Below, one piece after another: positions 13,463 through 64,000 of a stretch of 64,000 nucleotides of DNA. This DNA comes from Thalia democratica (lineage: Eukaryota): assembly GCA_965202585.1 (NCBI GenBank), contig OZ241829.1, forward strand, positions 18,166,001-18,230,000, in the 5' to 3' direction. How positions within the stretch are numbered: the first letter of the stretch is position 1; each line of letters opens with the position of its first letter. The position numbers were made by a program, and so were the translations under genes. The notes beneath the pieces were generated by a model, which did not search any database, was not told the origin of the DNA, and saw only the letters and a list, made by a program, of their open reading frames with translations.

Positions 13463-13677
13463 TCACAGCTCAGTGCAAGTAACAGGCGGTTGCCAACCGT
13501 CATGTTCCGAGCAAGTCGATTCGCCGTCGTTCGCAGCTACAAAGCCAGCACTACATGTGTACTTGACCGTAGTTCCAACAAAGAAATCATTTCGCACTTT
13601 TCCACCTGCGTAATTGTTTTCATTCGAAAACTCCCTACTGGAAACATTATCGTAATCAGAAAAATCTCTTGGGCATG
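13463..13677 (-). CDS. Terminal CCP exon 67 with stop codon
   Basis: phase-1 acceptor; CPRDFSDYDN..VKYTCSAG..TCSEHDGWQPPVTCTEL*; TGA at 13463-13465. Confidence 0.85.
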
Positions 13678-16600
13678 CTGTAAAAAACGAAAATTTACTT
13701 GTGTGGTTAATATCTTCATATATTAGTTCAATATATGTTATTTATATCTAGCAACACTAAGTCTATACTAATGTTATGTTTTCAAAATATTGTTGAAAAA
13801 ATAACAATTTGCTTTTATATTTTCTGTGTAAATACAAAACTATGATATTTTTCTAACAATTCTAATAAAAAACAGGAAAATTATTTAACGCTACAAAACT
13901 ATAAATGTAGCAAAATTGTTTTTTTATAAATTAATTAAAATAAATAAATGTTATTTGTACACAGCTTGTTTGAATGTACTCGTAAGTTTGAAACATAAGA
14001 CTACTTTTATCAACAAATCGTTACACAAAACTAGTTGTAAACTACAAGTGGCTAAAATAAGCTATAAATTTAGCTGTAATTATACAACCTCTAAGGCATT
14101 TTGGCAACGGATAAGGCCACCAAGGTTTTCCAGTTTCGCAAGTGATCCATCTTCTACTAGCATCATTAATATAAAAATTTTTTTGGCAGGACACCCATCT
14201 TTTGCGCCTCACCCAGTTTCCTTCGCTGCCATCATCAGCAACGTTTACACCAGTAGCATCCCTGTAAACCTCACTATAAAGAATCACCCCACTTGCAGGA
14301 TCAGGGCAGGGGAGTCCAGTTTCGCACGCTATAGGGTCCACGTCGCAATCTGTTGCAACACGTCAACAGTTAAAAGTAGCGAAAAAAAAAACAGAACGGT
14401 GGTTAGATGATAAAAAATTGAAAAGATCATTAAAAAAGCATTTAAGAAAAATATTCTATTTATACCTACTTTTGTTATAATTGATAACAGCAAAATTTTT
14501 GCTATATTTTAGTTAAAAGTAGAACTCACTTAGACCGCAGTTTGGTGCTGTTTTCGGGCTCCACTGGCCAGTCCTGCCACATGTCAAAAGATTTTTTCCG
14601 TTTCTGACGTCTGCAGGAAACAGTTCGTAATTTTCGGCCTTGCAAGAAGTGTACCTGACAGTGGTGTCTAAGAAATACCGGTTGTTTTTTAGGCTGTATT
14701 CATACTCCGCTTCGTATTCACTAATTTTAGGTGGTTCAGGACATTCTGTTAAGAACATAGCTGTTAAAAGAAGCCTTAAAATATAGCTTTTCTAAAAAGA
14801 CATAAGTTTGAAAACCCAAAAGTTGTGGTTGTTATGTATTAAGCAGTTTTTAACTATAGAATTTAGAACAAGTAAAAACTCATGAAAAAATCAGATAAAA
14901 ACAAAAAACTTTGTAACGGTACATCAAAAACAAACTGCCCCGTGGATAAAAAGTATTGCCTAAATAACGTCATATATCAAGCTAAAGTTTCCACATCCGT
15001 AAATGACCACAAAATTCATATTGGTTCAACCAAAAGAACATTTAAGTCTAAATATAATGAACACAAAACCTCTTTCCCCAAACCTTTTAAAGGCAAACCC
15101 AAAAACAGTACCCAACCTGCAAATCACCTATGGGATCTATACAGTAACCATATAAAATACTCAATTGAATGGAAAATAGTTAAATCAGTAAAATCTAACA
15201 CAAACCATACTAACATGTTCACTTTATGTAACCTAGAAAGACTCCATATAGCCCTAGCAGACAAAAGAAAAACTTTAAACAAGAGAAACGAGCTGGTAAC
15301 CCAATGCCCACATTACTTATGAATATTTATAGTTTATATCTCACATAGGTATAAATTTTATTAAGATATTTTATTACTTGTACTTGCATTATAATAGTAT
15401 TCCCATTCTAAGTCTTAAATTGTTAGAACTTTTTTGTTTTTATTTTTTCGCTTTTTTAAGTCTGTTTATTAGTAAAATATATTTCATTAAGATATAAGAT
15501 AAATTGTGCATGCTTTATAACATACCCATTTCCAGTTGTGAATTATTATTATTGTTTTTTTAAGTTGAATGAGTATAATTTTTTGAGTTGGATTATTAGT
15601 AGATTATACTTTCTTTGTTTATCTCTCAACTAAATATATTTAATTTATATCTTAGTTTTTGAATATAACATCTGAAATCTAACCCTCATTCTATTTTTAG
15701 CTTATCAAATATTTTCCACAAAAAGCCATTTTATTTTTTGTTATCATAATATAACTGTGTTAACAACTACAAAAATTCTTTCATAAATTTTCTAATGTTT
15801 ACTCCCGGGTTTTATTTTAAACATTATTACATTATTTATTTATTATTAGAACTATGTGCTTAATAATATGTACCTACTACTCCATAACTTCTTACTCTGT
15901 AAAGGTTTTATCTTTTTAAATCCATTAGATATCAATACCCCACTGTATACCATGGTTGTATTGTATTGTTTATAGACTATAATTTAATAGTTTTTGTATT
16001 AAAGGTTCTTTAGCATCAATATAACTTTTAATTTATTTATTGATTATTTTACTACAGATTTACAGTTTGTAAATCTGCTCTGCGGTGAAACTGAGTAATT
16101 GTTTATTCTCAAAAAAAATAAATTATTGAGTGGTTTTTGCCATAATACTGATCAAAAGTTTACAAAATAAGATCACGAAAGTCTAGTTCACAAAACAATG
16201 TAACACAGTTATTTAGAGTAAACAATTTTTTTTTTCAAAATTGATCTAACCTTTCATGCAAATTGCTTCATTTGTGTTGTTCCAACTACCGTTGTCCAAA
16301 CACTCGTAGACGTCTTCACTGTCATATAAAACAAAATCGCTGTCGCATTCTATTCGCACAACTTCTCCAGGCAAACGATTACCAGGTCGATGCTTGTGAT
16401 CTAAAATTTCTATTGACCCGTCTGGCACATCAAGCAAAGGGCATTCTGTGAAGTTATGTTTTGCTTGGAATATATAATTATTTTACAACTAAAACAACTT
16501 TTAACAGTTTATAATTATAAAAGCATGGGGAAACTCTAAAACATTATTGTAATTGTGAATCTATATTTTTTTGATGTTTTGTATTATCAATAAAGACTTA

Positions 16601-19600
16601 AAAGCCCTAAAAGTTAGCTAGATTGCGTTTCATTTTTTTTTAGATACAATATAGCTTTGTGTTACAATAGCAACTTAAAAAGATTAGAAATTACCTTTAA
16701 CACATTGAGGTATGTTCGAGGTATTCCAACTTCCGTCTTCCTGACAATAATAAACGAAATCGCCCTCATACAGCATCGAGTAGCTTTCCTTGCAAGCGTA
16801 CTCCAAAATTAAAGCCGAGTTGTAGATTGGATCCCTGCTCAAGACTTTTTTAACCAAATTGTAATGTTCAAGATCGTCTTCACTTATTGGTGAGGTTGGA
16901 CATCCTGCGGTTAGTTTTCAAAAATTGGTAAAATTAATGTTGCATAAAAAATAGTAGTTATATGTGATATATTGTTTCTTAATTGAAAAATATAAAAGTT
17001 ATAGAGTTTTTAACCTATTAAATAAAGGTATTTCAAGCAACTTAAGAAAAATTCTAGATCGTATTTAAAAAAACTAGAGAAGTGCAATACTTGACCATTT
17101 ATTTGATTGTAAACTGTGTCAGACTCAATAAAAATTCTATAAAGCGGTAAGTTTACAGCTTTCTAAACTTAAACTTTCATTTACTTTATTTCAAACATTA
17201 CACTACATTTAATTTTAAAATGTACCTTTTTCACAAGTACATATTGAGAAGAAAGTGTGTTAGCTAAACAAAATTTCAAGCTCAAAAACGTTTGTTTCAC
17301 CTATATAAACACACGATGGCGGGTCAGGAGTAAAAGAGTTGGTGTTGTGATCGCAGTTTACATAAGAAACTGATCCCTCTTCAATTTTGTACCTCGGATC
17401 GCAAGAGTACTGCACTTGCTGGACAACAGTGATGCTTCCTCTGTATTCATCCCATAATTCAACAGAGCTACTAGGGGTCCAACGACCCTTTTCTATTTCT
17501 TTAGGGTCTCCACACGCTACAAAGTAAAAGTTGTTGAAAACAGAAACAGCAATATTTTTTAAAAAAAGCTTAGACAAGTTAGATAATAAATTTGATAAAA
17601 AAAGTGCCTACAGCTGTTAATTGGAGGAAAAAATGTTTAAAGAAAAAGTCAAGTAAAGTTTTTTATTGCATAAATTGATGGCATAAGAGGGTTGAGAAAC
17701 ACTTTTTTAAATTTAGTCTTATTTTTTACATAACTAGATAAGCTAGTTGTTACTTTTTATCGCTTATTAAAATTCAAAGTAGTTTTTAGATATAAGCGAT
17801 CAAAGTTAGAGCGTTCAATAGGTTCTTTCTGAGAGGCGGAAATTAAAAGATGAAAGTAGACTGTCTTACTAAAAACCTATATCCTTCAGCAGTTTTTGAG
17901 CAGCTGTTTTAAGACTTTTTCACAATAAAATAAAATTTGTTCTTTTTTTCTAAAAATTTGAATTAAATTATTTTGAAAGTGAAGGAGGAAATAGATTTTT
18001 AGTAAATTTTTCAAAATTGCGAAGAAATTATGAAGAATCAGCTAACATAACCTTGAAAATTTTTGCTTCGATACAGTTGTATCGGAAAATTTTTACAAAA
18101 ATTTTTATGTTTTAATAGTTAACTGAAATTTTTTTTTGTTCAATTTTCTATAAAATGTATCGTATATTCTAAGCTTTAAAACAGGAGCCAACATTAGTTT
18201 TTTTAAAAAAAAATGTTTGACCCCCTCCCCTTCTATGCCCTTAATGTGATTGAAAAAACTCTATAAAACTATGAAAAAGTGAAGTAAAGACTTGGTAGAA
18301 TAGAAAGTTTGTAAAAGATTTTTTACAAAAATATTAAACCGCTTCTCGAAATTATTTAGTTGTTAACCTGTTACAACAGTTGTGTTGTGAACTGCTTCCA
18401 AACAAATTATTAGAAATAGAAATGAGAAAATATTTCAAATTAATTAAATATGTTTTTGTTAAAGTTGGACTTTACTACGTAATTTGTATTTTATTTTTAA
18501 TATAAGTTTTTTTTTTCTTTATTATTTATTATTTGATAACAATATTGATAGCAAACGCATAATTATTACTGGTAAGTATATTTACTACTATTAGTAAATT
18601 TTTAAACGTTAAACTCAGCTTACATAAAAAGTAATTAAGTTATGTAGTTAGTAGAAATTAAAGTACACACATTAGGCAAGTGAAAAATAATAATATGCAA
18701 TTAAAAAAGTAAACTTTCTATTGGCTTAAAGTTTAGATCATGTGTACTGGAGTACGGAGCAATATCTGCTAGGTTTTTACACCTTGTCCATTCGGCGCGG
18801 AGACCATTTTCTGGACGTTTGTGACTCACTAGGGCGTATGATTGCCTTTCTGTGGTAAAACATATTAGTTACACACAAAATCAAAAACAATCAGTTCAGG
18901 ATGCAAAAATTTAGCATTAACTATGAGTTTGTAAAAAAAAAATCATTTTTAATAATAAACGACTTGATTTCACAAAAACCAATACTTGATGTATAAATTG
19001 AAAGTAGTTTTATGTTGAAATTATTAAACAAAACCTAAGGAATCATCCAAACTATTTTTGAAAGTCTTTTAACTATTTATTAAAAGTGCAAAAAATAAAT
19101 AATTAAAAACGCTTGACTAAAAACGAATAAATTAAATCATTTAAACATTAAGCACAAAACTAAAATATGAAAAACCCTTAATTACTTTTTGATATTATTC
19201 TTAGTTTGAATCACGATTGACAGCTTTAAACTATTAAATCATTATTTCCAATTAAAAAGTCGATGAAAATAATGTCTGGTGATACTTTTAAGTCTGATTT
19301 TTGTCCGTTGTTGTTTTTGAAACTTTTTTTCAACTGTGCATTTTTAAATATCTATGAAAAGTAACTTCAACTAATTTATTTAAATTTTTAGGTTTAGGTT
19401 GTATTGATTTAACAGTTGTAACGGTTGTGATATTTGATTTTGAATAAAATGTTTACGGTCAGACAGTGACACGAATTCTAAAAAGCTTAATAGTTTAGTA
19501 AAATTTATATTAAGACTGAAATAAACTTGTTATATACAACATATTTCAAGCCTTGTGATGACGTTCTTCGGATTAAAAATAAAAGTTAATTCTATTTACT

Positions 19601-22600
19601 TACAGTTGATCTTAATAGAAGATTTAGACTAAGTTATAAATAATAAACATAAACTATCAAAACGCTTCTCATTAAACAGTACAACTTTTACCTACAAGTA
19701 CATTTATTACAATTAAAACTATATACTAATTTAGAAAATAATAATTTAAAGTTTTTTGGAGTCTTAAATGACATAGTGTTAATGGTTTCATCATAGTATG
19801 TTTAAGACTCAAAAGCATTTATACGGTTTTTATGTGTTTAATAAAACAAATCAATGACTGTAACTATTTTACTAAAATTACTGTTTAAAAAACTCATTAA
19901 AACAACAATCAAAAAGGCAACCCTACAAGGTTGGGTGTCGAACTAAGCCGAGGATCGGCACCTTTTATGAGCAACGGGTGTATTTTATAGATCAATGATC
20001 AGATTAAACTAAAATAATTGTTTGCCGGCAGTCATAGTTTCGTTGAGTTTAGTGTAAATAAAAAAAAAAACATAATGTTGCAAAACTAAATAGTTAGCAA
20101 GTTAGCTCTTTTTCTTATTTACTATTGTATAAACAACATATTTTAAACTTAAAATACAATATAACACATTGCTGTTCTAAGAAACTATCTTTAACAGATT
20201 GCAGTTTGCTAAACTAAATTTAATTTGGGTAGATTGATTTATAAAAGTATACTTCAGTTTAAATGTACACCTGTAAAGTAAAATAAACTACTTTATAAAA
20301 TTTATACCAATTGTGCTATCAGGTCGTTTATAACAAAAAAAGAAACTATAAACGAAATAAAAATACAAAAAGAAACCTCCATAAAACCTAAAGCCAGTAC
20401 AACGATCTTGTAATGCGCCTAAATTGTCTATCAGGTAATTTACTTCGTCCATTTGATTCGCTGTAAAGTCTCCCCAGTCTATAGCATCAACCACACCTAT
20501 AATAACCACTTCAAAATCTTTAGCATTATTTCTTATATAATCAGACATACTTCCAAGCTGTAACAAAAAAGATATGTGTTAAAACTAGCTTTAGAAAAAA
20601 ATAGAGTATAACATTAATAAGTAAATGTTAATACTGATTCGAAATTGCTATAAATTAAAATAATAATAAATCATTATTAAACTTTGAACATCAACAAATA
20701 AAAATTTTGGCTAAAATTAAATTAATATGTGATTATAACTAAATATTTAACCGTTTAATTCTTTTAGTACTTCCAAGTGTAAAAGGTAAAAAAAATATAT
20801 TTCAACTTTAATTAATTTATAAACAAGTGTTAGAAAAAAAACAAAAAAAATTAAAATGTTTACAACTTATAAAACATAAAAGCACTACAAAACTTAAAAA
20901 ACGTTGTGATAAGTATCAAAAACAAGGCATAATAGTAAAGTTTTCAATTGATACCTGACCACGGACAAAAGTATTTTCCAAGTCAACAGTATAAGTGTCA
21001 AAAATTTCATACTTATACATGAGGTATTTTTCGAACGGATTCAAAATGATAACGTTGAACCCTCTGTTATTTGAATCAGCACAAAAGGATTCGTTTTCGT
21101 TCACCGTGACTTCGCAACGAGAAGTCTGTTTGTATTCTCCAGCCACGTCCTCTGTTACACTGAAACTCGAGGCGCGTACGTGAAGATCTAAGTCTGATTA
21201 ATTTTTAATATATCAATATTTTTATCCAAAAAGTTTATTTTCTTGTTAAAATTTCCAATCAACAAAAACAACTTTGAATTTTAATAGTTTTTTGATAGCA
21301 CTGTGAAATTAATTCTAACTTCTTATGCACAGATGATCTCCTGAAAATTCAAGTCCAGGTGTCACCCATGATCCAGTTTTGTCGCATACAATCCCATCAA
21401 AACCGGGTGGGCTCATCAGAAAACCGTCGCTGCAAGTGTAGTGCACTTTGGTGCCTTGCAAGTACAAGCCTTCATCCGAAATCCATTCTATTCTCGAGCT
21501 TGCTCTTGAAATATTCAGAGAGGGAGGTTTTTCGCACTCTGAAAAAAAAATAATTGTGTTTTATAGTTTAACTTTTTTATTATTATGATATACCTCTTAA
21601 ACACTGAAAGCTGCTGTAGCTTGTCCAAGCCGGGCCTTCTATGCATTTGTAAGTAGTGTTTGATGCTTCTGGAGTTAAAGTGTGATTTTCTTTGCAAGTG
21701 TACTCAGCAACGAACTCTAGTGTAATTGTAGACAAAACCACTTGCTCGGGTACATTTTTAATAGTGCCAGGTATGTTCGGCGATTTTCCACAGTCTGAAG
21801 GTATACTTTAGCATAAGGAGTATTTTTAGAAAAAGATATGATAAAGATATGTTAAAGCTTTTTTAAGAGATGGTAAAGTTTTAAACGAACAATACTTGTT
21901 TAAAATTATTTCTTGACCGAGTCGTTCTTTTCTACACTAACTATAAAACAAAACATGCATGTAAGTATTTTAACACAACCTTAGACTTGTAAAATAAAAC
22001 AAGAGTAAGGTCTGAGACTGTATTACAAGGCATTTAAAAATAACATATATTAGCTAATTTGTAAAAAAATATGTTGTCAAAAATATAAACTAAAGAAAGA
22101 AAAGCAAAAATATTTTTTAATCAAAATGAAAACCTGGATAACACTGAAAAGCTGGGGTCCATTCACCATCTTCACCGCAAGTCAATTTCGTAACTTTTGG
22201 CGCGAAATTTTCATCACATTTGTAATCCAGTTCAGTGCCACTAAAATAACTACCACCACTACTTACCGGTTTAGTAATACTGTGAGACTCAGTATTGTCT
22301 ACGTTCGGTATTTCGCTGCATTCTAAAACGTTTCCAAAATCGGTATCATTTCAAGTTTCATGCTAATTACTTTTTTAAACTTATTTGAAAATATTTTGTT
22401 TAAATAAAAAAAAAATTATTCAGCTTTAAACAATTCTATACAAGGTAAAGCAAATAATAAAATTTTAAAGTATATCGTTATAAATTAGTTGTTAAAACAA
22501 ATACAACACTGCTTTTTAATAAAGTGTATTAAGCTTATCCGCTCCACCTTAAATCAGTTTATGAAATAATAAGAAATTAAAATATCTAAAAAAAACCGAG

Positions 22601-25600
22601 TTTAAATTATTGACATCCTATTTTAACTAACTTTGTAAACACTGAAAGTCGTTGTAGACCCACGATCCGTTTACACAATTACGAGTGGTATCTACAGCCT
22701 CTGGTAGTAAAAAGTACGGATGTATGCAAGTGTAAGATACAATTTGCTCAACTATTGTATCTGAATCGACGTTAGCTACCTTATCCACACTTTTTACTGT
22801 GTTTGGTATATCTTGTGATGGACCACAATCTGTAAATAGCATACATAAAATGAAAAGTAAAAGTTTCTTAAAAATCTGAAAAAAGTCTACAATTACTGAT
22901 CTGTTGTTAACAATAAAAAATAAAACTTTGTTTTTTTATTTGGTAAGATAAATGTTTTGCGTAATTTTGCTTTAGAGATAAGCCAACATTTAAATGAAAA
23001 ATTGTTTTTGAAGTTTACTGAGAAAAGATTATCACGAAAGCATTTTAAACTTGTGCTGTGTAAAAAAAAATTGTAGATTTGTTATCATAAAAATCTTTTG
23101 ATTGATTATTTATGTTGTAAACAGTAGAGTTAGTTGAAGTTAACTTTAATTAAACTTACAACCATTAAGCTATTTATTTCTGTTTTTTTCATTATAAAAT
23201 TTTAAATTTGTAAATTGTAGATTATTGTTCAAAGCATTCATTGTTTACAACTCTAAAAAGACCGATCTTAATCAAATTTAATGATGTAGCCTCTAAACAC
23301 AGACTATTAAAGCTGGTAAATCTGAAAGTTATGAACGATGAAATTGAAACAAATGTTTATATCAACCCTGACAAAACCATCTTAGAGCAAGAGTATTCAG
23401 AACCTTGAGATAAGAAGTTAAAATAAAGCACGTCAGATTAATCTAAACGAGAAATACGTAATCAGGAACAACAAAATTATGGAATCAACAAGACATTCGT
23501 TTCGTTTAAGCTCCTAGAAGCTCTTGGATTAGTAACAAAAACTGTAAGTCAATAGTTCTAAATATTTCTAAACATTTAAAACTATCTGATAAATTCAATA
23601 GTAAGTTTTCTTTGATAGTTATAATAATTGTAATAGTAAACATTTAAGAATTGTGTACACTAGTATAAGATCTGTTTTAAATAAAGTTGATTTTTTAGAG
23701 AGCTATTTGTACACGAATAATACTGATTTGTTTTTTCTTAGTGAAACATGGTTGACTCTTAAAGTCAACGATGCCAAAGTCTGTCCTTCTAACTATAATA
23801 TAGTCTGTAACGGTAGGAAAAGTAGGGGTGAAGGTGTTGCTATCCTTTACAGAAAATTCCTTAAAGTGTTAAAAGTTTAAAGAGATTCAATGTCTATTAA
23901 CAGCATAATTTTCAATACATAAATATAGAAGTAATTGAAAAAAGATAAAACTGGGATTTTTTGGTGTCTACCATCCCCAACTGTCTGCAAAATGTGCACT
24001 GACTGTTAAAAATATAAATAAAATTAAAGTACTTTTTCCAAATGACTACTCTTTTTTGTTTTTGGGGACTTTAATCTGCCTAACATGGATTGGACAATTC
24101 TTACCACAGACTATAATGAATTCCATTAGTGTTTTTAAAATTTTTGCACGGATAGTTTTTTAACCTAGGTAATCGAGAGTCCAACTCATAAAATTGGAAA
24201 CATACTTGATCTCTTAGTTTGCAACAATTTTAGTCTAGATAGAATTATATGTCATTCAATTACTATTCCATTAACAAGTACTTGTGACCAGGGGCGTAGC
24301 GTGGGGAGGGACGCTGGCGCATGCGTGTCACCAAAAAAAAAAAGTAAAGTAAAAAAAAAATGCAGTATTTTTATCCTTTATAGTTTATTTTTCTGCTTAA
24401 TTTGCCTTTTTTCAACTATGTATTTCTAGTATTTGAAAAGTAAAATGAAATTTCGAATACCAATTAGTGACAAGTTAGGGAAATTACCCAGTATACTGAT
24501 TCGATGCGTAATTTCAAATGTGCATTAATGTTGATGAAAAACTCCATAAGGAAAAATTTTATAACTTCATTAACTTCATAAGAATTTAGACTCAAACAGT
24601 ACGCAACTAGTTAGTGCACCGCAGTAGTATAACCTTATGACAGATTTTTTTACAAGGACAAATGCTAATATTTTGTTAACAAACCATAGAGCTAAATCTG
24701 TTTTATAGTGATAATGATTCAAGAATAAACAAATTGAAGTAAAAATAGCAATAAACAACTGCTAATATAATAAATATAAGTTGATGATAAGAATAAAAAA
24801 TATTAACAACATAATTTAAAAGAAAATAACAAAAAACAGAAAAAAATAAAATAATAAATTAAAATAAATAACAAACAAACAGTTCATACTGTGATTACAG
24901 TTTTAATCTTACTATACAAAAAGTATTGTTTAAATTATCTAAACTTGAAATTTTTATTAAAACTAGTTTCTTTTTTTATTAAAATAAGAAACAAATCAAA
25001 CTTTGTTATTCTATCAGCCAGAAAGTTAAAAAAAAAAAAAATTGTAGCAAGTTATTTTAAAATTTCTTTAGTTTCATCATGAATTAATTAATAGCAACTT
25101 GTTAAACTTATACCAGTCAGAACGAAACAAAAGAATACATAGGATCCACAGGAAGCCAGTTCAAAAAGAGATGGTATGCGCACATTAGTGATATTAAGAA
25201 TGAAAACAACAAGGGAACAGAGCTTTCCAAGTACATTTGGAGACTAAAAAACAATAACACCAGCTACGATTTAAGATGGAGCAAAATGCACAAGATCAGG
25301 GAAATGAAGAATATAGGTAAAATCTGTAAGACTTGCAATTTGGAAAAGATAGAAATAGCACTTGCTAATAAGAAACGAATTTTAAACAAAAGACAAGAGC
25401 TCTTCTACACCTGCCCGCACTTTAGGAAATTTTATTTTAAAACTTAGCGTATAAATTTTTCTATCACTTAGTTCTGTTTTTGTTATTACTTGTACCCTCA
25501 TTTGTTAAGCGCCATTTTGTTTTGTTATAAGCTAAATCCAAATCTATATAGAACAAATCATCTATTGTAAGTATAAATCATATTTAAAATTTTAAAAAAA

Positions 25601-28600
25601 AGTCTTTTTCATTGTTATAAAACTTTTAATTTTGTTAACTAATTATCTAGTAATAGCGCTATACATTTTTAATTTTAATTTGAATTCAATAATAATTTTT
25701 TGCATTATTGTATTTTCTTAAGTTGTCCATCGTATTATGTTTATCTTATTTTACAGGCCTGAAGATCCCTTAGGGGAGAAACATTGTAGCCTTGTAAATA
25801 AATTAAATAAAAAATTAAGCAACTTGTTAAACAAAATTTTTACAATCAATTTTTAGTCTAAAAGACAAAATAGATTAATTTTAAATTTAAATTTATTTAG
25901 TTTTAAATCTAATTTAAAAAAATACTATTCTGTAAAGATCTTATAAAAATTGATTTTAAGATAAGTGAAAAGTTATATTTCTGTGAATTTTTAAAAGCAT
26001 TGAAAAAGTTAACCTTAAAAAATTTATCTTTTAAACATTTTGTTTTGTATCAAAAACATTTAGTATCTTTAGTAATCTTTCCACACACTCAGGATAACTC
26101 AAGTGGTATGAAATTTTGATTTTTAATTTTGTTTATATTATAAATTTTCTTCATTTTTTAAGATTTATTTTTACAGTTTTATATTGTAATATAGGTACAA
26201 ATGTAGAAGTTAAAAAAAAAACTAGCGCTTTAGATTTCTTCTACAAAAATTAAAAATTTAAAACTTTCAATTTTAATACTGAAGATTTAATATTATTATA
26301 CATAAGATTAAAATAGTATATTAAAAGCGGCAACAAACTAAAAGTATGAATTATTTTGAGTTTAATACAATTCTTTTTTGTTGATTTAAAATAGATATTA
26401 AACATTATTTAGAAATTGCACAGAGAAAAATATTTTGAGGTATTAGTTGTTATACTTAGTTGACTATTTATTTGTAGTTTAAGGCCATAGGGGGGGTAAG
26501 CCATGTTTTTTAGAAGTTGATCTTATTTTATAGATTTTGTTTTAAGCTTTAAGATGCTTTTTGTTGTTTTAAAAAGTTCGAATTATTTTTTGAGATATGA
26601 TCAGTTAAAGTCGGGCCGCATAATAGGTTCCCTATGGGAAGGGAAAACTAAAACAGCGAAAAAAGGCTACTTTGTTTAAAATCTATCTCCTTATACATTT
26701 TTCAAGCAATTTTCTTCAAACTTTAACAGTTTAATCTTTGTACAATAGCTGAAAACATTACTTATGATTTTATAAATTTGTAGTAAAATTTTTATTTTTT
26801 GAAAAAGAAAAGACTTTTTTTTTCATTTTTTTTTATAAAATTTTTGTTTATTTTTATTATTTAAATTCATAAGTTAAATTTTTTTCTTGTAATGTAAGGA
26901 AGAGTTTCTAAAATTTGAAGAAGATTGCTTGAAAAATGAAGTGGGAGATAGGTTTTTAGTAATTTTTTAAATTTCCGAGAAAATTGACCCTGAAAAATTT
27001 GCGGCCCAAAGGTTTTAATTTAGGGGACTTTTTGAAAAAAAAATTTGCGCACCCCCTGACAAAAATACCACGCTACGCCACTGCTTGTGACCATAACTTG
27101 ATTTCATTTAAAATTGAAAGTCAAAAAGTATTTTAAGCTAAAAATCATTCATATGATTTAAAAAAAAGTAGATTTTGAAAACATCAATAATTACTTGTCA
27201 AAAAATAATTAGACTTCGTTATTTAACAAGTCAAGAAATCTCCAACATTTTTATGACCAATTCATCAGCATAATTTAAACCTCAACTAAAGGTTTTATAT
27301 CACTTTATTCTAAAAACAACAAAATTAAAAATATACATCTCACATTAAAAAAATATTAAATGAAAAAATTATTCTTAAAAAAAAAAAAAGACAAACATAT
27401 AATTTTCTAAAGATTATAAAAATAAGTCAAAAGAATATCAATTAGCCGTTGAATAATAAAATTTTGAACATTAAGAGAATTCCGCAAAAACCCAAGTTTA
27501 AAAACGTTTTATTTTACGTAAAATCTAAAATTAAATTAAGTACTGCAAAACCCCTTTTCATGTGACAATGATAAAGATAAAACAGTAATTTCGGACTTTG
27601 AAGTAGCCTCAATTTCAAGGAGAAGTTTCCAAAAAGTACTAAAAAAAGATGATAACAACCAAAGTTTTAAACTAGCTCAAAAAAATTATAGTAAAATTGA
27701 AAACTTTTTTACAACTTATGAAGACACTAACAATTCATTTAACCACCTAAAAAATGAATCATTAGAACCCCAGAAAATATCCCGCCCTATTTTTTATTAA
27801 GTATGCAATTTCATGAATAGTTTTTACATTTTCATTAGTTTTAAATTGCTTATATTATTAGCTGAAGTACCAAAAAAAAATGTATTTTGTCATTCTAGTC
27901 CATAAGAAGAGTGACAAACACAACACGTTAAACTATAGGCCAATATCTTTAACTAGTGCCTTTTCTAGATTTTCTTAGCACATTATATCTACAAAAATTC
28001 ATAAGCACCTTATTAACTATAATTTACTATCTAAAATACAATTCGATTTTGTCCCTAACCGCTCGTCAAATATTCGTCTGTTAGCATGCTTACATTCATG
28101 GATATTTCCTTATCTCAAAAACTAATATATTAAAGTAGTTTACACTTATATTAAAAAAAGCTTTCGATTCAGTATCACACAAACGATTATTAAGTTTTTT
28201 TTTTAGCTAATACGTACGACATGAATCCTTAGTGAATTGGTTCAAAAATATTTTAGTTAGGGGATAACAAAGTGTGGTAATTAATGATACGCTGTCAGAC
28301 CCTTTAACGATATACAGCGGAGTACCACAAGGTGGTGTAATTAGTAATTGTAACAGTTAGTGACAAGGTTCATTTTTTCACGTAGCAATGACTATGTGGA
28401 ACAAGTTACCACAGGAAGTGGTGTCGTGTGAGAGGGTGGAACATTTTTGCATACAACTAAAAGAATTAATCTAAATTTAAAAAATACCAGTAAAGTTCAA
28501 TAATTGTCCAATAAAAAGAAGATATCTTTATAATATCTAACTCATCGAAATTAACTACTGAATCTTTTTTTTTCAATGTATAATATTAATTATTTTCATT

Positions 28601-31600
28601 TCCCTACGCCTCCCCCCTAACAGACTTTTTTTTTCTTTTATTGAACTTGTAGAAATGTTTTATGTCATATAAACAATCGTCTATTTGGTTGTACTTTCTT
28701 TTTTGTATGAACCAAGTTGTCGCCTTTTAAACTAAACATTTAAGTTTAAGCTTTAATTAGTTCTTTATAAATTTAATTTAGTTTAATTTTTTTGTTTATG
28801 TTTGTTTTTTATAAAAAAACCGTTGAATAAAAAATACTTTATCTAAATTTTTATTTTTGTGTGTCCTGTTTAAGTGGCCAAGATTCTGATGCCTGAATTC
28901 AACATTACATACAAAACTAATAATAATAATAATAATATATTAGAAATCTTTATATTTATCAATGTGACAAAATGTCAAAAACTGTTGAAAATAAAATACT
29001 AAAAAAGTGTAATACTTGACCATTTACCACATTGTTTGAATAAAAACTACTTTGATAATTTATTTTTCCAACTTACCACTCAAACACTCAAATTCTTTAA
29101 AAACCCAGGTTCCATTGACACAACTATGAGTGGTGTCCTGATCATATGGAACTAAAAAGTACGGTTGTTGGCAAGTGTAAGAAACTTCAAGTTCAACTTC
29201 TTCTCCTGAATCAACTGGAGCTGTTACATCCACACTCTTCAACGCGTTTGTAATAGCTCTTGATAAACCACAATCTGTAAATTGAATTTGTTATTTAGAG
29301 TATTGTAGAATTAAAGTTTCACAAAAGTGATTTTAACTGACACTACTGACAACGTTTTATAGTTTAACCACACATTGTTTCTATAAGTATTTAAACTTAT
29401 TTTAAAATTTAATAGAAAAAGAAACTACCTATAATATTTTAAATCAATGAGAAGACAAAAAGTAAGTTTTTTTCAATTTTGCACAAGCTTATAAACTATT
29501 TATTTTTGTTAACTTATGTTAACTGCATTTTACATCTGTACTGTAAATCTGACATGAGTGTATACTTTTGCTGTAAATATTAGTAAATAACTAACAATTT
29601 ACAATTTTTATTTGTAAGTTATTTGCCAAACTAAAATGAAAAGTTTTGTAATCTATTCCTAATACTACCGTCTAATAACTTCATTTATATTGTTATTTTG
29701 GGTCATTCTTATATGAATATATATAGTATTTTATTTTAACTGTTCAAAATATAGGTTTAATCGTTTGCTAATAAAAGATCCTAGTGAAATAACTTCACTG
29801 GAATATAAATAAAAACAAATTGTACAGTAATCTTCCTTTATTGTACCAATATATAATTCTGTGTGTTAATGAATCAACACACTTCAACTGGGTTCTGTAA
29901 AAAAAAATTACTGTAATGAAAGAATAGAAGCATAGAATAAACTGGGTGTATACATGTTTTTCATTAAAATAAAATAATTTCTACAGATAATAGTTAATAA
30001 TAGGTAAAAACTTAATATTAAATCCGACTGTTATAAAACTATATAATATTTGTAATTATCAAATCTAAAACAAGTAAAGTAAACTAAAATACACAACAAA
30101 ACAACAAATCATAACATAAATAAAGCACTCACGTTAAATGGAAAGAATAACTAATTCAAATTTACTGTTGTTAATGAATGAACGAAATACATTTATTACA
30201 TCTAATAATTACGTCGCTATATAAATGAGGTTATTTCAACTGTTTAATTTGTATTGCAAAGTTTTTTAATTTAGTTTTTACGTTTGTAATCTATTTTGAA
30301 CAAAAATAAAACATGAACCATTAGTTAGTGAATCAATAAAATCTAATAAAACTTAACAACGGCGAAGACAATAAAAGTCACAGAAAAAAACCAGTTTAGT
30401 AAAATCGTTTAATGAACTACTTATTTGTTGACTAGTTTTAATTTGATAAAGATAATTTTATTTATTTAAGGTGACACCGTTAAAAAGAAAAAGTTAAGGA
30501 AAATAAACAATCTTGTTTTCATTTATAAAAGAAAAAAATTTCACATAAAAAAATTATGTTTCTTAACAAAAAGTTAACTTCTACTATAACAAAACCATAA
30601 GAAGTTAGCTAATTAAAAAAAAAACTCTTTATAAAAATTAATAATTATAAATAATAAATAACAAACTGCAATAAATTAAAAAAAAATTAACTAAAATAGT
30701 CAACTAAAGTGGTATTTATGCAATAATCTTAACAAGAGCACCGAGCCAAAACCACTCAAAAAGCAAAACTCTAAAGAAGATAGCTCAAAAAAAAACGTAA
30801 TAGATAAACCAGCAACCTCTTAAGCACGTAGGAGCCTCAGTGTGAGGCCAGCTTCTGTCCTCATTGCAAGTGAATGTATAGGTGGTACCGGGGACAGCCA
30901 CCAAACCGTTTGTGCAGCGGTAGGTGGCCTCTGGCATCGGCAACCACTTACCTTCCAGCTTTTTGGTGATTGTCACGTCTACGTTTTGTCCCTTTGGTGG
31001 GTCAGCGCATTCTGTTGTGGTTATTTAAGTAAACGTAAAAAAGCTGTCTTTATAATTGCTGTAGCATTTAAATAAAGCCATTTCTTTAGCTTTAAGCATG
31101 ATGTTTTTAATAAGTTGCAAAGAAAAGTATTGAAATTAAAAAGGACCTCTGAGACAGCCGACAGCGTGTTTCCATCCCATCGTGGTGCAGACGACTTGGT
31201 TGTTCAACGGATGGGGAGTAGCATCAGTGTTGCAGGCGAAGTTCAGGAGCTCACCGTCAAAGTATTCTTCATCCGGGTTTACGTCACTGTACACTCCGTT
31301 GTACAGCACTGGCGGCGGATTTTCGCAAGCTGAAAACAAGTAGTTTAAAAGTCTACTTTATTAAATAATTTTCGAATTGGTCAAAGTTTTAGGTGGAGCT
31401 GAGAGCTTGAAATAATTTACTGTCAGTGATGACAATATACGCGAGATGATGTCATAAAAGTGCAGAGCAACAAAAGTACATGGGTCTCTGATACATTCCA
31501 TGTTAATTTTTATTACAGTTTTAATACAGTATAGTTTTGATATACAAATTTTAACAAAGTTCAAAGTAGTTCAACCTTCCTCGTAGTCGCTATGACGTCA

Positions 31601-34600
31601 TCATATGTTAATCGTGACGTCTGTCATACCAGGCTTTATAAAACTTAAATGAAAATTTTATATTTCTGTTTTACAAATACAAAAACTGCCTGTGCCAGCC
31701 GAAAATGTACAGTACGAAGTTCAACAAAAATCTCACCGTCAAAGGAGAACGTTTTGTTGATCTCAAGAGCTTCAAGACTGTTCGTTTTGCATTCTGCCCA
31801 GCTGGGAACGGGGGCGTGTTCTGGAAATCTGCCGGTTACCACAACCCAAGAGTGGTGTGTGTCTGTTTGAAATGATACTTGTGTTGAAGCAGGTATTAAT
31901 AACTGTGGTTTTCAATGAAATGTAAAGTTTTACATAGTCATTTATTATAATATTATCGAAAACGCTCTTTTTGGAAAAACGTTTCAACATCTGTATTAAT
32001 ATAAAATATCTAATTCTTACATTTGCTGTCCTTGTAGATATATATTTTTTATTACCAATAAATTAAGTTTAGTGATGAAATTGAGTTATCTGTTTTCAAG
32101 CTTTTAGTTATAGGATTGTGTAGAAAATATTATATTTGAAAGAATAGTTCATCTTTTTGTAATTTTTCTTTAGAAATAAATGTTTTTTTAAAACTCCACA
32201 AGTACTAAAGTAAAATGTAATTAAAAAATTTATACTACTATATGTTATAGGAAAGTTATACATAAACTATAGTGTTTGCAAAACTTTTATTGTTAATGAG
32301 CAATATTTATAAGCAGTTAAAGTATGAATATAAATTAATAAATAAACTTTTAAAAACATAACTAAAAAAAAATAGCCAAGTAGTTGCATTTTAAGTTTAA
32401 ATACGAGTTTATTTGACGATTCAAAAATAAACTAAGTTATTAGACTCTTAAAAGTACAGTAAAATGATACAACGAGTAATAACCAAGGGTTTCCAATGAG
32501 CATCTATCAATTCTGTCTACTCCGATTTTCGCCATTATATTGTTGGAATTTTGTGAAAACTTTTGACGGAGTTTTTGCGCTCCTCTAACTGCCATGACTA
32601 TCACGTCACCGTAATTCGAATTGTCTTCGATGAAAGCAGCCATGCGTTCAAGCTGATTAAAAGTCTTCGATGATAAACCGTTTTCAATATTTCGGTATCA
32701 TAGATAAAATTTGTTAAACCAAGTAAAATCTAATTAAGATTACATTTTAGACTTTAAGTTAAATTATTTCAACAGTCTCATATAATTTCATTCTCTTCTA
32801 CAAAATAAAAACAAACAATTTATCTAAAACTGACAAAAAACTTCAAAATTGTTATAGCATAATAGTTTATTCTTACTTTAAGTTTTAATCAATGTACTAA
32901 TAAATTCAAAATGACCCACTATAATTTCATCCAGCATGGTGTCGAACCTGTTGTATTGGACAGTGTCGGTCAAAGGGTTTATGATTGCAACGCCAGTTCC
33001 TCTTTCGCTCCCGAACAAATTATCGGATCCTTGCCACTTTATGATTCCGTTCCTTTGCGTTGACGCACCATAGCCCGCTGATAATGCGTAAACGTGGAAA
33101 GTCTCTGCCAAAATAAAAACTAATAGATTCAGCGATTTTTTTTTTGAAATACTTTAAATCAGATAAAGGTTTATTTTCACTAAAATCTTGATGTGTTAAC
33201 TTTTTTAGTTTTGTGTTCTAGTCCTTATAATTAATTGTTTTATTTAGTTTATCATACTGAGAAGGTAGAATACTATGAAAAATGTAAGAATAACAAAAAC
33301 TAAAAAGTGTACTATAAAGATCAATAAAAACCCTTACTAGTTTTAAAAGTAACTTACTAACAATTGATCTTATAACAAAACTATAAAAAATGTATTTAAT
33401 TGTGACCGTTTATGTAAGTTGTTTAGTGATATTCACTAACTTTAATTTTAACATTAATTTGGTATTAAGTAAAATTTGTTCTGTTAGATTGACTTGTCCT
33501 ACAATGTAAGCTAACTGATTTTCAGTAAAAATTATTATTGCATTTTCTTCGTTGCCAAGCAAATCTCTAAAAAGTGCTGTTTTTTTATGGTTTGAAGTCA
33601 CAGTGGGATGTTGTGTGAGATCTTTCAAAGAAGCTTGTTGAAACGTGCTGCTCTTTGCTCTTATATAACAAGCTTTGTTTGTAGTGTTTGATTTAATATG
33701 TTCCTAACTTGTATATTTATAATATTTCCAGAACATATGTAAGTCAGTAGACCACATATGTACTTGTTTTACCTAAAATGTGGTTAACCTATTGTTAGTT
33801 TAATCTATTGTATGATATATACGTGCTGTTTGTATAACATATTTTTAGAACTATCCCAAACTGGTGCCTGATTTAAACCTTAGCTCACCGTTTTTAACAG
33901 AATTTCTTAAATTTCATCCGAGCGTTTTGGCTTGTCATGCTTTGCTTCCACCTTTAATGCAAATAAAACTGCCGCGCGTACAAATATAAAGCAAATTAGC
34001 TTTTTTAAAACCTGCGCACAATGGATAACTAGAAGTTTGACTTTGATTACAACTCGTTAAGTTTTGTTTATATATGTAGTAATAGAGTCCTGTTTTAATA
34101 ACTACATAACTTTTTTTATTCCTTGAAATAAATTCAAGTTGTATATATTAGGTATCAATTTATACTTTAAACGTATTTTATGAATGCAAATATTTAATAA
34201 TTAGTATCTAAAAAGAAAATTAAACTTCAAAACAAAAAATGTTTTTTTTGTAAATAGTTGTAATGACTACTATTTTAAGCTTACTCTCAACTAAACTGAC
34301 TTGGAGAGTAAATTGAAACAAAACATAAAACTAGAAACAAATAGTTTTTCTAACCATACTCTTAAACAAACAGAATAAAACTTCAACTGACTTGGCGTGC
34401 AGGCGGGAGGTGTGGAGCGATCCCAATCGCCTGAGTCCTGACAAGTGATCGTGTCGGAACCTTCCAGGGTGTGGTGAGCATCGCATGAGTAGACGGCTTT
34501 TGTGCCAGGAATCATCAATTTGTCGTCAGTGCTGTACACTATCTTGTAGTTGGACCGGCCTTCGAGAGGTGGGTATGGGCAAACTGGTATGGAAACAAGC

Positions 34601-63390: not shown

Positions 63391-64000
63391 CTTGAAAAAA
63401 ACAATGGATGTTGTTTTGTTAAATAAAGTTTAAACTAAAACAGTAGCAAAAAAAAAAGATTTAAACCTAATTGATTTAACAGTAGGAATTTACTTTTGTA
63501 AATCAAAAGTATTTTAATCACTAGTTCAAAAAATTAGCTTGAACAAAACATTAAAATAGTTATTTATCTGAATTTAAAACTGATGGATAGGTGAATTTGA
63601 TACATTTTTATATTTGTGGTCAAACTTAGCTATCAAATAAATAAACCTTTTAAAAAGCATCTGATAAAATGTTACGAGTTTACCTTTGTAGAAAAAAGTG
63701 CATGTTTAGTTAATAAACACTCTGAATAAAGATTACTGATTGTTTAAATACGAACTAATTACAATCAACAAAAACAATTGATTTTTTTCTCATTGAATAA
63801 AAATACAAACAGTTTTAACTTTTATTCTTTAAAATTCGAATAACTTTTTGTGTTAAATGATTTAGATAGAACTATAAACAAATGCTTATAGTACAAACTT
63901 GTTTAAGTAAAGCACAAAAAAAAACTTTATTTTAGTTATTTAAAAAATATACCACTTAAAATAGATTCGAAAAAGTTAGATTTAAAAAGTTCGGATAATT

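What the first reader, a model, noticed from the sequence alone, without database searches (positions are those of the whole stretch)
18715..33104. ILEI/PANDER-like domain as a three-exon symmetric cassette, duplicated and slotted between CCPs
Seen: both copies (33104-31737 and 21187-18715) have the same exon split and phases (1-0, 0-1, 1-1), both second exons begin cag|CTT, and both carry RG.x.V.I.NP..FDT, a hydrophobic strand ending AVRG/GVVDA, an (L/I)G motif and S(W/Y). The sequences are otherwise highly diverged, and copy 2 has extra cysteines. Known: this fold occurs in FAM3/ILEI cytokine-like proteins and as the GG lectin domain of POMGnT1 and CEMIP/TMEM2. Inference: an old exon-shuffled glycan-binding module giving the CCP rod two distinct ligand-binding heads spaced by seven CCPs.
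Basis: partly seen in the sequence, partly recalled or inferred. Interest (0 to 1): 0.72.

Follow-up and report, generated by a model that had tools for sequence, protein, structure and literature searches.

The report
Two FAM3-like domains in CCP giant
A giant protein gene made of about 61 complement-control (CCP/sushi) exons in a marine animal carries two old, very different copies of the FAM3/ILEI sugar-binding fold. Each copy is a three-exon in-frame cassette, and only the second keeps the known sugar-binding residues; this is an undescribed domain mix rather than a new kind of system.

Summary
On the minus strand, two three-exon cassettes sit between phase-1 CCP exons: 33104-31737 (480 nt) and 21193-18715 (555 nt). 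Both have exon phases 1-0, 0-1 and 1-1. A marine metatranscriptome contig joins the three exons of copy 2 exactly and runs on into the next CCP exon. It moves the start of copy 2 from 21187 to 21193.

Pfam ILEI and PDB sequence searches find nothing exon by exon. The spliced domains do match the POMGnT1 stem (ILEI/GG) domain:
- Profile against profile: 97.7% probability, E 1.8e-12; five control regions score below 1%.
- Single copies: 93% and 92%.
- In reverse, the cassette HMM hits 116 of 118 POMGnT1 proteins, always in the stem region.

The genome's own Pfam-positive ILEI genes have the same two introns.

Copy 2 and its kin keep the Arg-Asp-Arg GlcNAc-binding triad. Copy 1 and its kin have lost the Asp (10/10) and mostly the second Arg (9/10). 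So "two sugar-binding heads" is only half supported. Internal duplication is also unresolved, because the tree gives a trichotomy.

The gene belongs to a multigene family, with relatives in Tara Oceans contigs. No structure was predicted, because a spliced protein has no reference. The scan's earlier notes held only this same finding.

The parts
13463..63418 (-). Part of the giant CCP-repeat gene inside the window. The order is about 48 CCP-like exons, ILEI-1, 7 CCP-like exons, ILEI-2, then 6 CCP-like exons. The 5' end probably lies beyond the window. A possible stop (TGA) follows ...VTCTEL at 13465-13463.
   Evidence: Stop-free minus-strand stretches with the CCP Cys/Trp pattern. Pfam Sushi hits on sampled exons. 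Sequence at the 3' end.
34399..34581 (-). CCP exon just upstream of ILEI-1 (first to last Cys given). Its donor CCAA|gtcagt is in phase 1.
   Evidence: Pfam Sushi 40.1 bits. Phase read from the sequence.
32920..33104 (-). ILEI-1 exon 1, phase 1 to 0. It holds the N-terminal strands and the RGTGVAIINP...FDT motif.
   Evidence: Splice sites. 21 copies in the genome at E<1e-5. Orthologous exons at 57-68% identity in Tara Oceans and other ENA marine metagenome contigs.
32484..32652 (-). ILEI-1 exon 2, phase 0 to 1. It begins cag|CTT and holds the VIVMAVRG strand and the KIG motif.
   Evidence: In the language-model feature search the three best clusters all carry PF15711 ILEI (top score 0.87, a lead only).
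31737..31862 (-). ILEI-1 exon 3, phase 1 to 1. It holds HSWVVVTGRFPEHAPVPSWAECK, the most conserved segment of the copy 1 type.
31154..31327 (-). Intervening CCP 1 (first to last Cys). Its acceptor ttttcag|CT is in phase 1.
   Evidence: Pfam Sushi 17.8 bits, below the cut-off. Phase. An orthologous CCP follows the cassette in Tara contig L013.
30788..31024 (-). Intervening CCP 2 (open stretch, approximate).
   Evidence: CCP Cys/Trp pattern. No Pfam hit at E<=0.01.
29063..29290 (-). Intervening CCP 3 (open stretch, approximate).
   Evidence: CCP pattern. No Pfam hit.
22630..22935 (-). Intervening CCP 4 (open stretch, approximate).
   Evidence: CCP pattern. RNA contig record 2 joins 22632-22702 to 22177-22322. 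No Pfam hit.
22120..22350 (-). Intervening CCP 5 (open stretch, approximate).
   Evidence: Pfam Sushi 35.1 bits. Covered by the RNA contig.
21586..21807 (-). Intervening CCP 6 (open stretch, approximate).
   Evidence: Pfam Sushi 17.9 bits, below the cut-off.
21318..21560 (-). Intervening CCP 7 (open stretch, approximate). Its donor AGAA|gttaga is in phase 1.
   Evidence: Pfam Sushi 30.1 bits. Phase.
20955..21193 (-). ILEI-2 exon 1, phase 1 to 0. It holds two Cys (RCEVTVNENESFC) and RGFNVIILNP...FDTY.
   Evidence: RNA contig piece 20955-21193. 15 copies in the genome at E<1e-5.
20377..20557 (-). ILEI-2 exon 2, phase 0 to 1. It begins cag|CTT, holds VVIIGVVDA and NLG, and ends at the donor GGAG|gtttct.
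   Evidence: RNA contig piece 20377-20557.
18715..18849 (-). ILEI-2 exon 3, phase 1 to 1. It holds ERQSYALVSHKRP...EWTRC.
   Evidence: RNA contig piece 18715-18849, which continues into the next CCP exon. 18 copies in the genome at E<=0.001.
17353..17514 (-). CCP exon just downstream of ILEI-2 (first to last Cys). Its acceptor gtag|CG is in phase 1.
   Evidence: The loose end of the RNA contig reads ...CGDPKEIEKG in frame. Pfam Sushi 23.5 bits..

Best explanation
Shown:
- The window holds most of a very large minus-strand gene with about 61 CCP/sushi exons.
- Two three-exon, phase 1-1 cassettes are inserted in frame among them.
- Each cassette encodes a full-length but divergent domain of the FAM3/ILEI/GG family, 160 and 185 codons long. 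This is the family of the POMGnT1 stem domain.
- Copy 2 is transcribed and spliced as modelled.
- The two copies represent two old subtypes. Each subtype is kept across a multigene family in this genome and in related marine plankton DNA.
- The cassettes share both internal introns with the genome's free-standing ILEI genes. They therefore arose from genomic, intron-bearing copies and not from retrocopies.

Inferred:
- The product is an extracellular CCP rod carrying two FAM3-fold modules seven CCPs apart.
- The C-terminal module (copy 2 type) keeps the Arg-Asp-Arg triad with which the POMGnT1 stem binds beta-linked GlcNAc. It most likely acts as a lectin head, much as the selectins' lectin domain sits on a CCP stalk.
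- The copy 1 type has lost the Asp and usually the second Arg, but has a nearly invariant TGRFPEH..VP(S/T)WAECK segment. It most likely no longer binds sugar in the canonical pocket, and either binds another ligand or plays a structural role.
- The animal is probably a pelagic tunicate.
For: Splicing and expression:
- RNA contig X1 record 1 joins 21193-20955, 20557-20377, 18849-18715 and the next CCP exon.
- All ten copy-1-type and four copy-2-type cassettes splice to multiples of 3 with AG/GT at the same places.

Homology to ILEI:
- hhalign of the cassette alignment against the POMGnT1 stem alignment: probability 97.7%, E 1.8e-12, 120 columns. Five control windows of POMGnT1 score below 1%.
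- Single sequences: copy 1 93.3% (E 2.6e-7), copy 2 92.0% (E 6.5e-7).
- A stem-only HMM scores copy 1 at 23.5 bits and copy 2 at 19.1 bits. Window decoys score 5.9 bits or less, apart from two minus-strand ORFs (20.3 and 12.2 bits) that I take to be the cassettes' own first exons; I did not map them.
- In reverse, a cassette-only HMM hits 116 of 118 POMGnT1 proteins at E<0.01, always at residues about 95-221, and 0 reversed decoys.
- POMGnT1 proteins carry Pfam ILEI at 123-212 (87.8 bits).
- Language-model feature search with copy 1 exon 2: the three best clusters carry ILEI.

Link to the genome's Pfam-positive ILEI genes:
- BLASTP of exon 1 against their first exon: 35-36% identity, E 1e-5 to 3e-6.
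- Identical intron positions and phases.
- Their middle exon scores 25-29 bits on PF15711 in the single-protein scan; in the genome scan the best exons score up to 30.2 bits.

Triad and family:
- Triad columns; residue roles from PMC9802357.
- Coding constraint: dN/dS 0.12-0.20 in deep pairs.
- Family size and near-identical gene copies.
- Tara Oceans orthologues with the same three exons followed by a CCP exon.
- Tunicate affinity: the best named hits of the POMGnT1 orthologue are ascidians.
Against: - Pfam PF15711 gives no hit on any of the six exons and none inside the window in the whole-genome scan.
- Exon-1 and exon-2 profiles find no FAM3 or POMGnT1 chain in the PDB sequence set at E<=10. 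The signal appears only with the spliced domain and profile methods.
- No structure was predicted, so the beta-beta-alpha fold is inferred from homology.
- There is no RNA evidence for copy 1.
- Sugar binding is inferred from three residues only. The 25% identity between the copies and about 20% identity to POMGnT1 leave room for a changed pocket.
- No signal peptide or membrane anchor was seen, because the 5' end lies outside the window.
- The tunicate assignment rests on one gene.
Confidence: 0.7

Rival explanations
1. One reading: both domains are working glycan-binding heads with different specificities.
For: - Both are full-length ILEI-type domains under purifying selection.
- The first Arg (RG motif) is kept in 9 of 10 copy-1-type sequences.
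- Exon 3 of the copy 1 type is very strongly conserved, which fits a working surface.
Against: - The copy 1 type lacks the Asp179 equivalent in 10 of 10 sequences and the Arg207 equivalent in 9 of 10.
- In C. elegans FAMP-1, the Fam3L1 domain lacks these same two residues and did not bind GlcNAc or mannose resins (PMC9802357).
Confidence: 0.2
2. Neither domain is a lectin here. Both serve as protein-binding or spacing modules in the CCP rod, as the FAM3 cytokine-like proteins are thought to act through protein receptors.
For: - Identity to POMGnT1 is only about 20%.
- Young paralogues show dN/dS of 0.4-1.05, which is more typical of fast-changing protein recognition.
- The molecular mechanism of FAM3 proteins is still described as unclear (PMC9802357).
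Against: - The full Arg-Asp-Arg triad is kept in all four copy-2-type sequences despite 42% identity among them.
- FAM3C and FAM3A themselves bound sugar resins (PMC9802357).
Confidence: 0.2
3. On origin: the two cassettes entered the CCP gene separately, from two different free-standing ILEI genes, and are not an internal duplication of one cassette.
For: - Copy 1 type, copy 2 type and the free-standing genes form three strongly supported clades joined in an unresolved trichotomy.
- Copy 2 shares with the free-standing genes the extra Cys pair and the triad, which most of the copy 1 type lacks.
- Each copy's first exon is 35-36% identical to a free-standing gene's first exon, against 25% between the two copies overall.
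Against: - Both copies share features the free-standing genes lack: NP after the first strand, a (D/G)xC motif late in exon 2 (DRC in both window copies), and a similar tail after W..C.
- The most divergent copy-1-type member (L041) still has the Cys pair, so the difference could be later loss.
- Only two complete free-standing genes were in the tree.
Confidence: 0.4
4. The resemblance to ILEI is a profile artefact and the cassettes encode some other alpha/beta domain.
For: No Pfam or PDB sequence hit exon by exon. No structure model.
Against: - Reciprocal profile hits, all in the right region, with clean controls.
- A colinear alignment over about 150 residues, including RG, FDT, the hydrophobic strand, (L/I)G and SW.
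- The same introns as genes that pass Pfam ILEI.
Confidence: 0.04

Closest known systems
POMGnT1 stem domain (ILEI/GG-type lectin domain, Pfam PF15711)
   Same: Homologous over about 120-150 residues by reciprocal profile tests. It shares the RG...FDT motif, the hydrophobic strand, the LG motif and the (W/Y) strand. Copy 2 keeps the equivalents of Arg129, Asp179 and Arg207.
   Different: Identity is only about 20%. The domain is embedded between CCP modules and is not attached to a glycosyltransferase. Copy 1 lacks two of the three sugar-binding residues. There are extra Cys in copy 2 and a different C-terminal tail.
FAM3A-D (ILEI, PANDER) secreted single-domain proteins
   Same: Same family by way of POMGnT1 and Pfam ILEI. 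The domain length of about 160-185 residues covers the whole FAM3 fold, not only the 90-position Pfam core. The resemblance of the N-terminal strands to FAM3 is from my own knowledge and was not tested.
   Different: FAM3 proteins are small free-standing proteins, whereas here the domain is an internal module of a giant mosaic protein.
C. elegans FAMP-1 with tandem Fam3L1 and Fam3L2 domains (PMC9802357)
   Same: One protein has two FAM3-like domains. One keeps the Asp and second Arg of the triad and binds sugar; the other lacks them and does not. Copy 2 and copy 1 here show the same pattern.
   Different: In FAMP-1 the two domains are adjacent, N-terminal and followed by a POMGnT1-like catalytic-type domain. 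Here they are seven CCPs apart in a CCP rod. Binding was not tested here.
Selectins and other lectin-on-CCP-stalk adhesion proteins (own knowledge)
   Same: It works alike in principle: a carbohydrate-recognition domain held out on a rod of CCP modules, built from phase 1-1 exons.
   Different: The selectin lectin is a C-type lectin at the N-terminus, followed by an EGF domain. Here the lectin-like fold is FAM3/GG type, internal and present twice. There is no homology between the lectin domains.
CEMIP/KIAA1199 and TMEM2 (G8 plus two GG domains; PMC9704909, PMC10276149)
   Same: Large extracellular proteins that carry two GG/ILEI-type domains.
   Different: Their partners are G8 and PbH1 repeats, not CCPs. 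They were not compared by sequence here.

Membership tests
ILEI / FAM3 / GG-type lectin domain (Pfam PF15711) | Match to the Pfam ILEI model above its gathering score | tested here: inconclusive
   No hit for any of the six exons taken singly, and none in the window in the six-frame genome scan. The spliced domain could not be submitted because it has no reference. The model's 90 positions are split over three exons.
ILEI / FAM3 / GG-type lectin domain (Pfam PF15711) | Significant, reciprocal profile homology to a bona fide member (POMGnT1 stem, itself Pfam ILEI 87.8 bits) | tested here: met
   hhalign 97.7%, E 1.8e-12, with controls below 1%. Single copies 93% and 92%; stem HMM 23.5 and 19.1 bits. 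In reverse, 116 of 118 hits in the stem region and 0 reversed decoys.
ILEI / FAM3 / GG-type lectin domain (Pfam PF15711) | Three-layer beta-beta-alpha fold of FAM3B/FAM3C/POMGnT1 stem | not tested
   Structure prediction and fold search need a reference or typed letters. A spliced protein has no reference, so the step was left out.
ILEI / FAM3 / GG-type lectin domain (Pfam PF15711) | Sugar-binding triad equivalent to human POMGnT1 Arg129, Asp179, Arg207 (PMC9802357) | tested here: inconclusive
   Copy 2 type has R-D-R in 4 of 4 sequences. Copy 1 type keeps the first R in 9 of 10, has G (once E) for the Asp in 10 of 10, and keeps the second R in 1 of 10. So the feature is met for copy 2 and not met for copy 1.
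ILEI / FAM3 / GG-type lectin domain (Pfam PF15711) | Kinship with same-genome genes that pass Pfam ILEI | tested here: met
   BLASTP E 1e-5 to 3e-6 on exon 1. Same two intron positions and phases. Their middle exons score 25-29 bits on PF15711 in the single-protein scan, and the best exons up to 30.2 bits in the genome scan. They form one clade with both cassette types, apart from POMGnT1.
CCP / sushi repeat protein (Pfam PF00084) | Sushi model match and four-Cys, one-Trp pattern in about 60-residue, phase 1-1 exons | tested here: met
   Of 11 CCP-pattern exons sampled that carry the usual pattern, 6 score 23.5-40.1 bits (above the cut-off), 2 score 17.8-17.9 bits and 3 have no hit at E<=0.01. 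A twelfth, atypical Cys-rich exon at 14045-14362 gave no Sushi hit. About 61 exons carry the pattern. Phase 1 borders were checked at four junctions.
Exon-shuffled symmetric module | Cassette bounded by introns of the same phase as its neighbours, with length a multiple of 3 | tested here: met
   480 and 555 nt, with phase 1 at both ends and in the flanking CCP exons. The RNA contig confirms the junctions of copy 2.

The most novel reading that the evidence does not exclude
The copy 1 type may be a new functional subtype of the FAM3 fold. It has given up the sugar pocket for another ligand site, marked by the nearly invariant TGRFPEH..VPSWAECK segment. The whole CCP-ILEI gene family would then be a fast-diversifying recognition repertoire (immune or self/non-self) of a pelagic tunicate. 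The family has about 15-20 members, near-identical recent copies, and dN/dS up to about 1 among young paralogues.
Probability: 0.12. Interest if true: 0.7.

Novelty: new variant of a known kind. Interest (0 to 1): 0.4.

Why it matters
The FAM3/ILEI/GG fold is known from small secreted proteins, from POMGnT1 and from CEMIP/TMEM2, and its mode of action is still debated.

Here the fold appears as an exon-shuffled module inside a CCP rod, in two old subtypes. One subtype keeps the GlcNAc-binding triad and the other has lost it. That gives a natural paired comparison for asking what the fold does with and without the sugar pocket.

The case also shows how this fold spreads. It moves as a three-exon genomic cassette with phase 1-1 borders, which fits CCP exons.

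The finding is not a new kind of system. Mosaic extracellular proteins with new domain mixes are common in marine invertebrates.

Tried and rejected
- **Pfam on each exon alone:** no ILEI hit, only two chance hits at E about 0.1.
- **Whole-genome PF15711 scan:** 42 hits, none in the window.
- **Representative search (1.84 billion proteins) with copy 1 exon 1:** six single-exon fragments from marine metagenomes, plus three large proteins. The two I scanned, P0005 and P0009, carry unrelated domains and I judged them spurious. No annotated full-length protein was found.
- **PDB sequence search with the exon-1 and exon-2 profiles:** no FAM3 or POMGnT1 chain. The top hits were designer or unrelated proteins.
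- **Two scans of JGI metagenome contigs to find a cDNA-type contig that would give a contiguous reference:** nothing.
- **Language-model atlas search with copy 2 exon 1:** no usable hit.
- **hmmalign to the stem HMM:** it cut most cassettes short, so I used a MAFFT L-INS-i alignment for the triad columns.
- **My first donor for copy 2 exon 2 (20404, GATC|gttgta):** wrong. The RNA contig shows 20377.
- **Literature search for an ILEI-plus-sushi architecture:** only noise.

Full report
**Setting.** The window has 24-38% G+C. It is C5:18166001-18230000 of an 802 Mb assembly. Its minus strand carries a long run of stop-free stretches of about 60-70 residues with the CCP (sushi) Cys/Trp pattern, from 63418 down to 13466.
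- I count about 48 such exons upstream of the first cassette, 7 between the cassettes and 6 after the second.
- Of 11 sampled exons with the usual pattern, Pfam Sushi hits 6 above its cut-off (23.5-40.1 bits) and 2 just below, and misses 3. A twelfth, atypical Cys-rich exon (14045-14362) gave no Sushi hit.
- The first CCP exon lies at the window's edge, so the 5' end of the gene is probably outside.
- After the last CCP the frame reads ...VTCTEL and then TGA.

**The observation.** Copy 1 splices as 33104-32920, 32652-32484 and 31862-31737 (185 + 169 + 126 = 480 nt), with good acceptors and GT donors.
In a 2016 marine metatranscriptome, a 1873-nt contig lies on 18715-18849, 20377-20557 and 20955-21193 as adjoining pieces with 0-1 mismatches.
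- Beyond 18715 the contig carries on into sequence that reads CGDPKEIEKG, the start of the next CCP exon.
- So cDNA does join these exons. The cassette is 239 + 181 + 135 = 555 nt.
The same cag|ACTTGA acceptor is seen in diverged paralogues.
- Exon phases are 1-0, 0-1 and 1-1 in both copies. Both second exons start cag|CTT. The four flanking CCP junctions are in phase 1.
- The two spliced domains align at 25% identity over 126 residues (E 6e-6), and both introns fall in the same alignment columns.

**Is it ILEI?** The simple tests were negative.
- Pfam found no ILEI hit in any single exon, and the six-frame PF15711 scan of the genome gave 42 hits, none in the window.
- Profiles of exon 1 and of exon 2 found no FAM3 or POMGnT1 chain among PDB sequences.
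- A spliced protein has no reference, so I could not send it to the Pfam or structure tools. I worked in scripts from window.fa and fetched sequences instead.

Three lines of evidence then converge.
- **Shared gene structure.** The genome's own Pfam-positive ILEI genes (loci L001-L011) have a three-exon layout like the cassettes. The first exon ends in phase 0 six residues after FDT. The middle exon starts three residues before a conserved Met and ends in phase 1 a few residues after a Cys. The third exon starts just before R-x-S-W. Their middle exons score 25-29 bits on PF15711 in the single-protein scan, and the best exons reach 30.2 bits in the genome scan. Exon 1 of each cassette matches their first exon at 35-36% identity (E 1e-5 to 3e-6).
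- **Profile homology to POMGnT1.** The genome's POMGnT1 orthologue (L008) brought in 120 POMGnT1 proteins with annotated ILEI domains. An alignment of ten copy-1-type cassettes plus two copy-2-type cassettes (the window's copy 2 and L038) matches the POMGnT1 stem alignment by hhalign at 97.7% probability, E 1.8e-12, over 120 columns. Five other POMGnT1 windows score below 1%. Two further copy-2-type cassettes (L036, L037) were spliced later and enter the triad alignment and the tree. Copy 1 alone gives 93.3% and copy 2 alone 92.0%. A stem-only HMM scores them at 23.5 and 19.1 bits. Window decoys score 5.9 bits or less, apart from two minus-strand ORFs that I take to be the cassettes' own first exons and did not map. 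In reverse, an HMM built only from the cassettes hits 116 of 118 full-length POMGnT1 proteins at E<0.01, always at residues about 95-221, and no reversed decoy.
- **Language-model lead.** A feature search with copy 1 exon 2 returned ILEI clusters as its three best hits. This is a lead only.

I conclude that both cassettes encode divergent full-length FAM3/ILEI/GG domains. The fold itself remains inferred.

**Function.** According to PMC9802357, the POMGnT1 stem binds beta-linked GlcNAc through Arg129, Asp179 and Arg207.
- These residues are conserved in FAM3 proteins and in FAMP-1 Fam3L2, which bind sugar resins.
- Fam3L1 lacks the Asp and the second Arg and does not bind.
- In a joint alignment, all four copy-2-type domains have R, D and R at these columns, as do the free-standing ILEI genes.
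- The ten copy-1-type domains keep the first Arg (9 of 10). They have Gly (once Glu) for the Asp, and His, Tyr, Thr, Asn or Ser for the second Arg (Arg in one).
- The copy 1 type instead has a nearly invariant TGRFPEH..VP(S/T)WAECK segment in exon 3.

My reading is that copy 2 is a plausible lectin head on the CCP rod, and that copy 1 has probably lost the canonical pocket and does something else. This is inference from three residues.

**Family and origin.**
- Copy 1 exon 1 has 21 matches in the genome at E<1e-5 and copy 2 exon 1 has 15.
- Near-identical gene copies with the same 11.9 kb spacing between cassettes lie at C2:61.46 and 61.51 Mb.
- Diverged members cluster on C5 at about 12, 16, 24 and 25.4 Mb.
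- Contigs from Tara Oceans metagenomes carry the copy-1-type cassette with the same three exons, short introns and a following CCP exon.
- dN/dS is 0.12-0.20 for deep pairs and 0.4-1.05 for young paralogues.
- In a tree, the copy 1 type, the copy 2 type and the free-standing genes are each strongly supported clades. Together they are separate from POMGnT1, and they are joined in an unresolved trichotomy.
- So the split is old, but internal duplication against two separate insertions cannot be decided.
- Because the introns are shared, the cassettes came from genomic DNA and not from retrocopies.

**Organism (inference).** The best named POMGnT1 hits are ascidians. The relatives come from open-ocean metagenomes, and the RNA comes from a marine metatranscriptome. 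A pelagic tunicate is likely.

**Comparison and novelty.** The domain is a new divergent branch of a known family. An ILEI domain embedded in a CCP rod was not found in the 1.84-billion-protein search or in the paper searches, but I could not query domain architectures directly. In principle it works like a lectin on a CCP stalk, as in the selectins, and its pairing of an intact and a degenerate domain resembles FAMP-1. I rate it a new variant of a known kind, of moderate interest.

Noticed in passing
G000 C2:61462855-61477247 and C2:61514529-61528723; also C2:61375150, C5:18287716 and C5:18294220: There are near-identical (95-100%) copies of the cassette exons elsewhere. Two tandem gene copies on C2 have the same 11.9 kb spacing between the two cassettes. 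Two copy-1-type exons lie on the opposite strand only 58-64 kb beyond the window's end. These are recent segmental duplications or uncollapsed haplotypes.
   Followed up: partly
window 34300-63400, minus strand: The CCP exons fall into recurring sequence types, for example GCPSPP..WKI.FSH, VCEVPPY, ECN.IPT, DCG.SP.I.N and ECK..E. The same order of types repeats about five or six times, so the rod grew by tandem duplication of multi-CCP blocks.
   Followed up: no
window 22935-29063 (intron); 23653-23880 on the plus strand; 24116-24500: The 6 kb intron between CCP 3 and CCP 4 holds a plus-strand ORF with a weak match to the endonuclease/exonuclease/phosphatase family (19.2 bits), probably a non-LTR retroelement fragment. 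It also holds a very high-copy repeat, with summed contig depth of 81,000-234,000 against about 300 nearby.
   Followed up: partly
G000 C8:59411145-59567802, C6:64.36-64.46 Mb, C6:16.4-17.0 Mb, C1:26.4-26.9 Mb: The genome holds large tandem arrays of free-standing ILEI-type genes. There are 42 PF15711 hits, and one array on C8 has a period of about 13.4 kb. At least some of these genes are followed by a Cys-rich exon ending ...GGWWPDQFKCPKC, which has no Pfam family.
   Followed up: partly
L008 = G000:C7:21655068-21658328: The POMGnT1 orthologue sits in one 655-codon open frame and so appears to be intronless. Its ILEI region scores only 22.9 bits on Pfam, below the cut-off, so the fold diverges fast in this lineage in general.
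   Followed up: partly
window 8001-10000: A G+C-richer island (38% against about 27%) has overlapping long open stretches in several minus-strand frames that are rich in Pro, Ser and Arg. It lies downstream of the CCP gene and was not examined.
   Followed up: no
Cassette paralogues L036/L037, L017/L035 and c1/L040: dN/dS among young paralogues is high (0.55-1.05), against 0.12-0.20 for deep pairs. This could be relaxed constraint or diversifying selection. The counts are small.
   Followed up: partly
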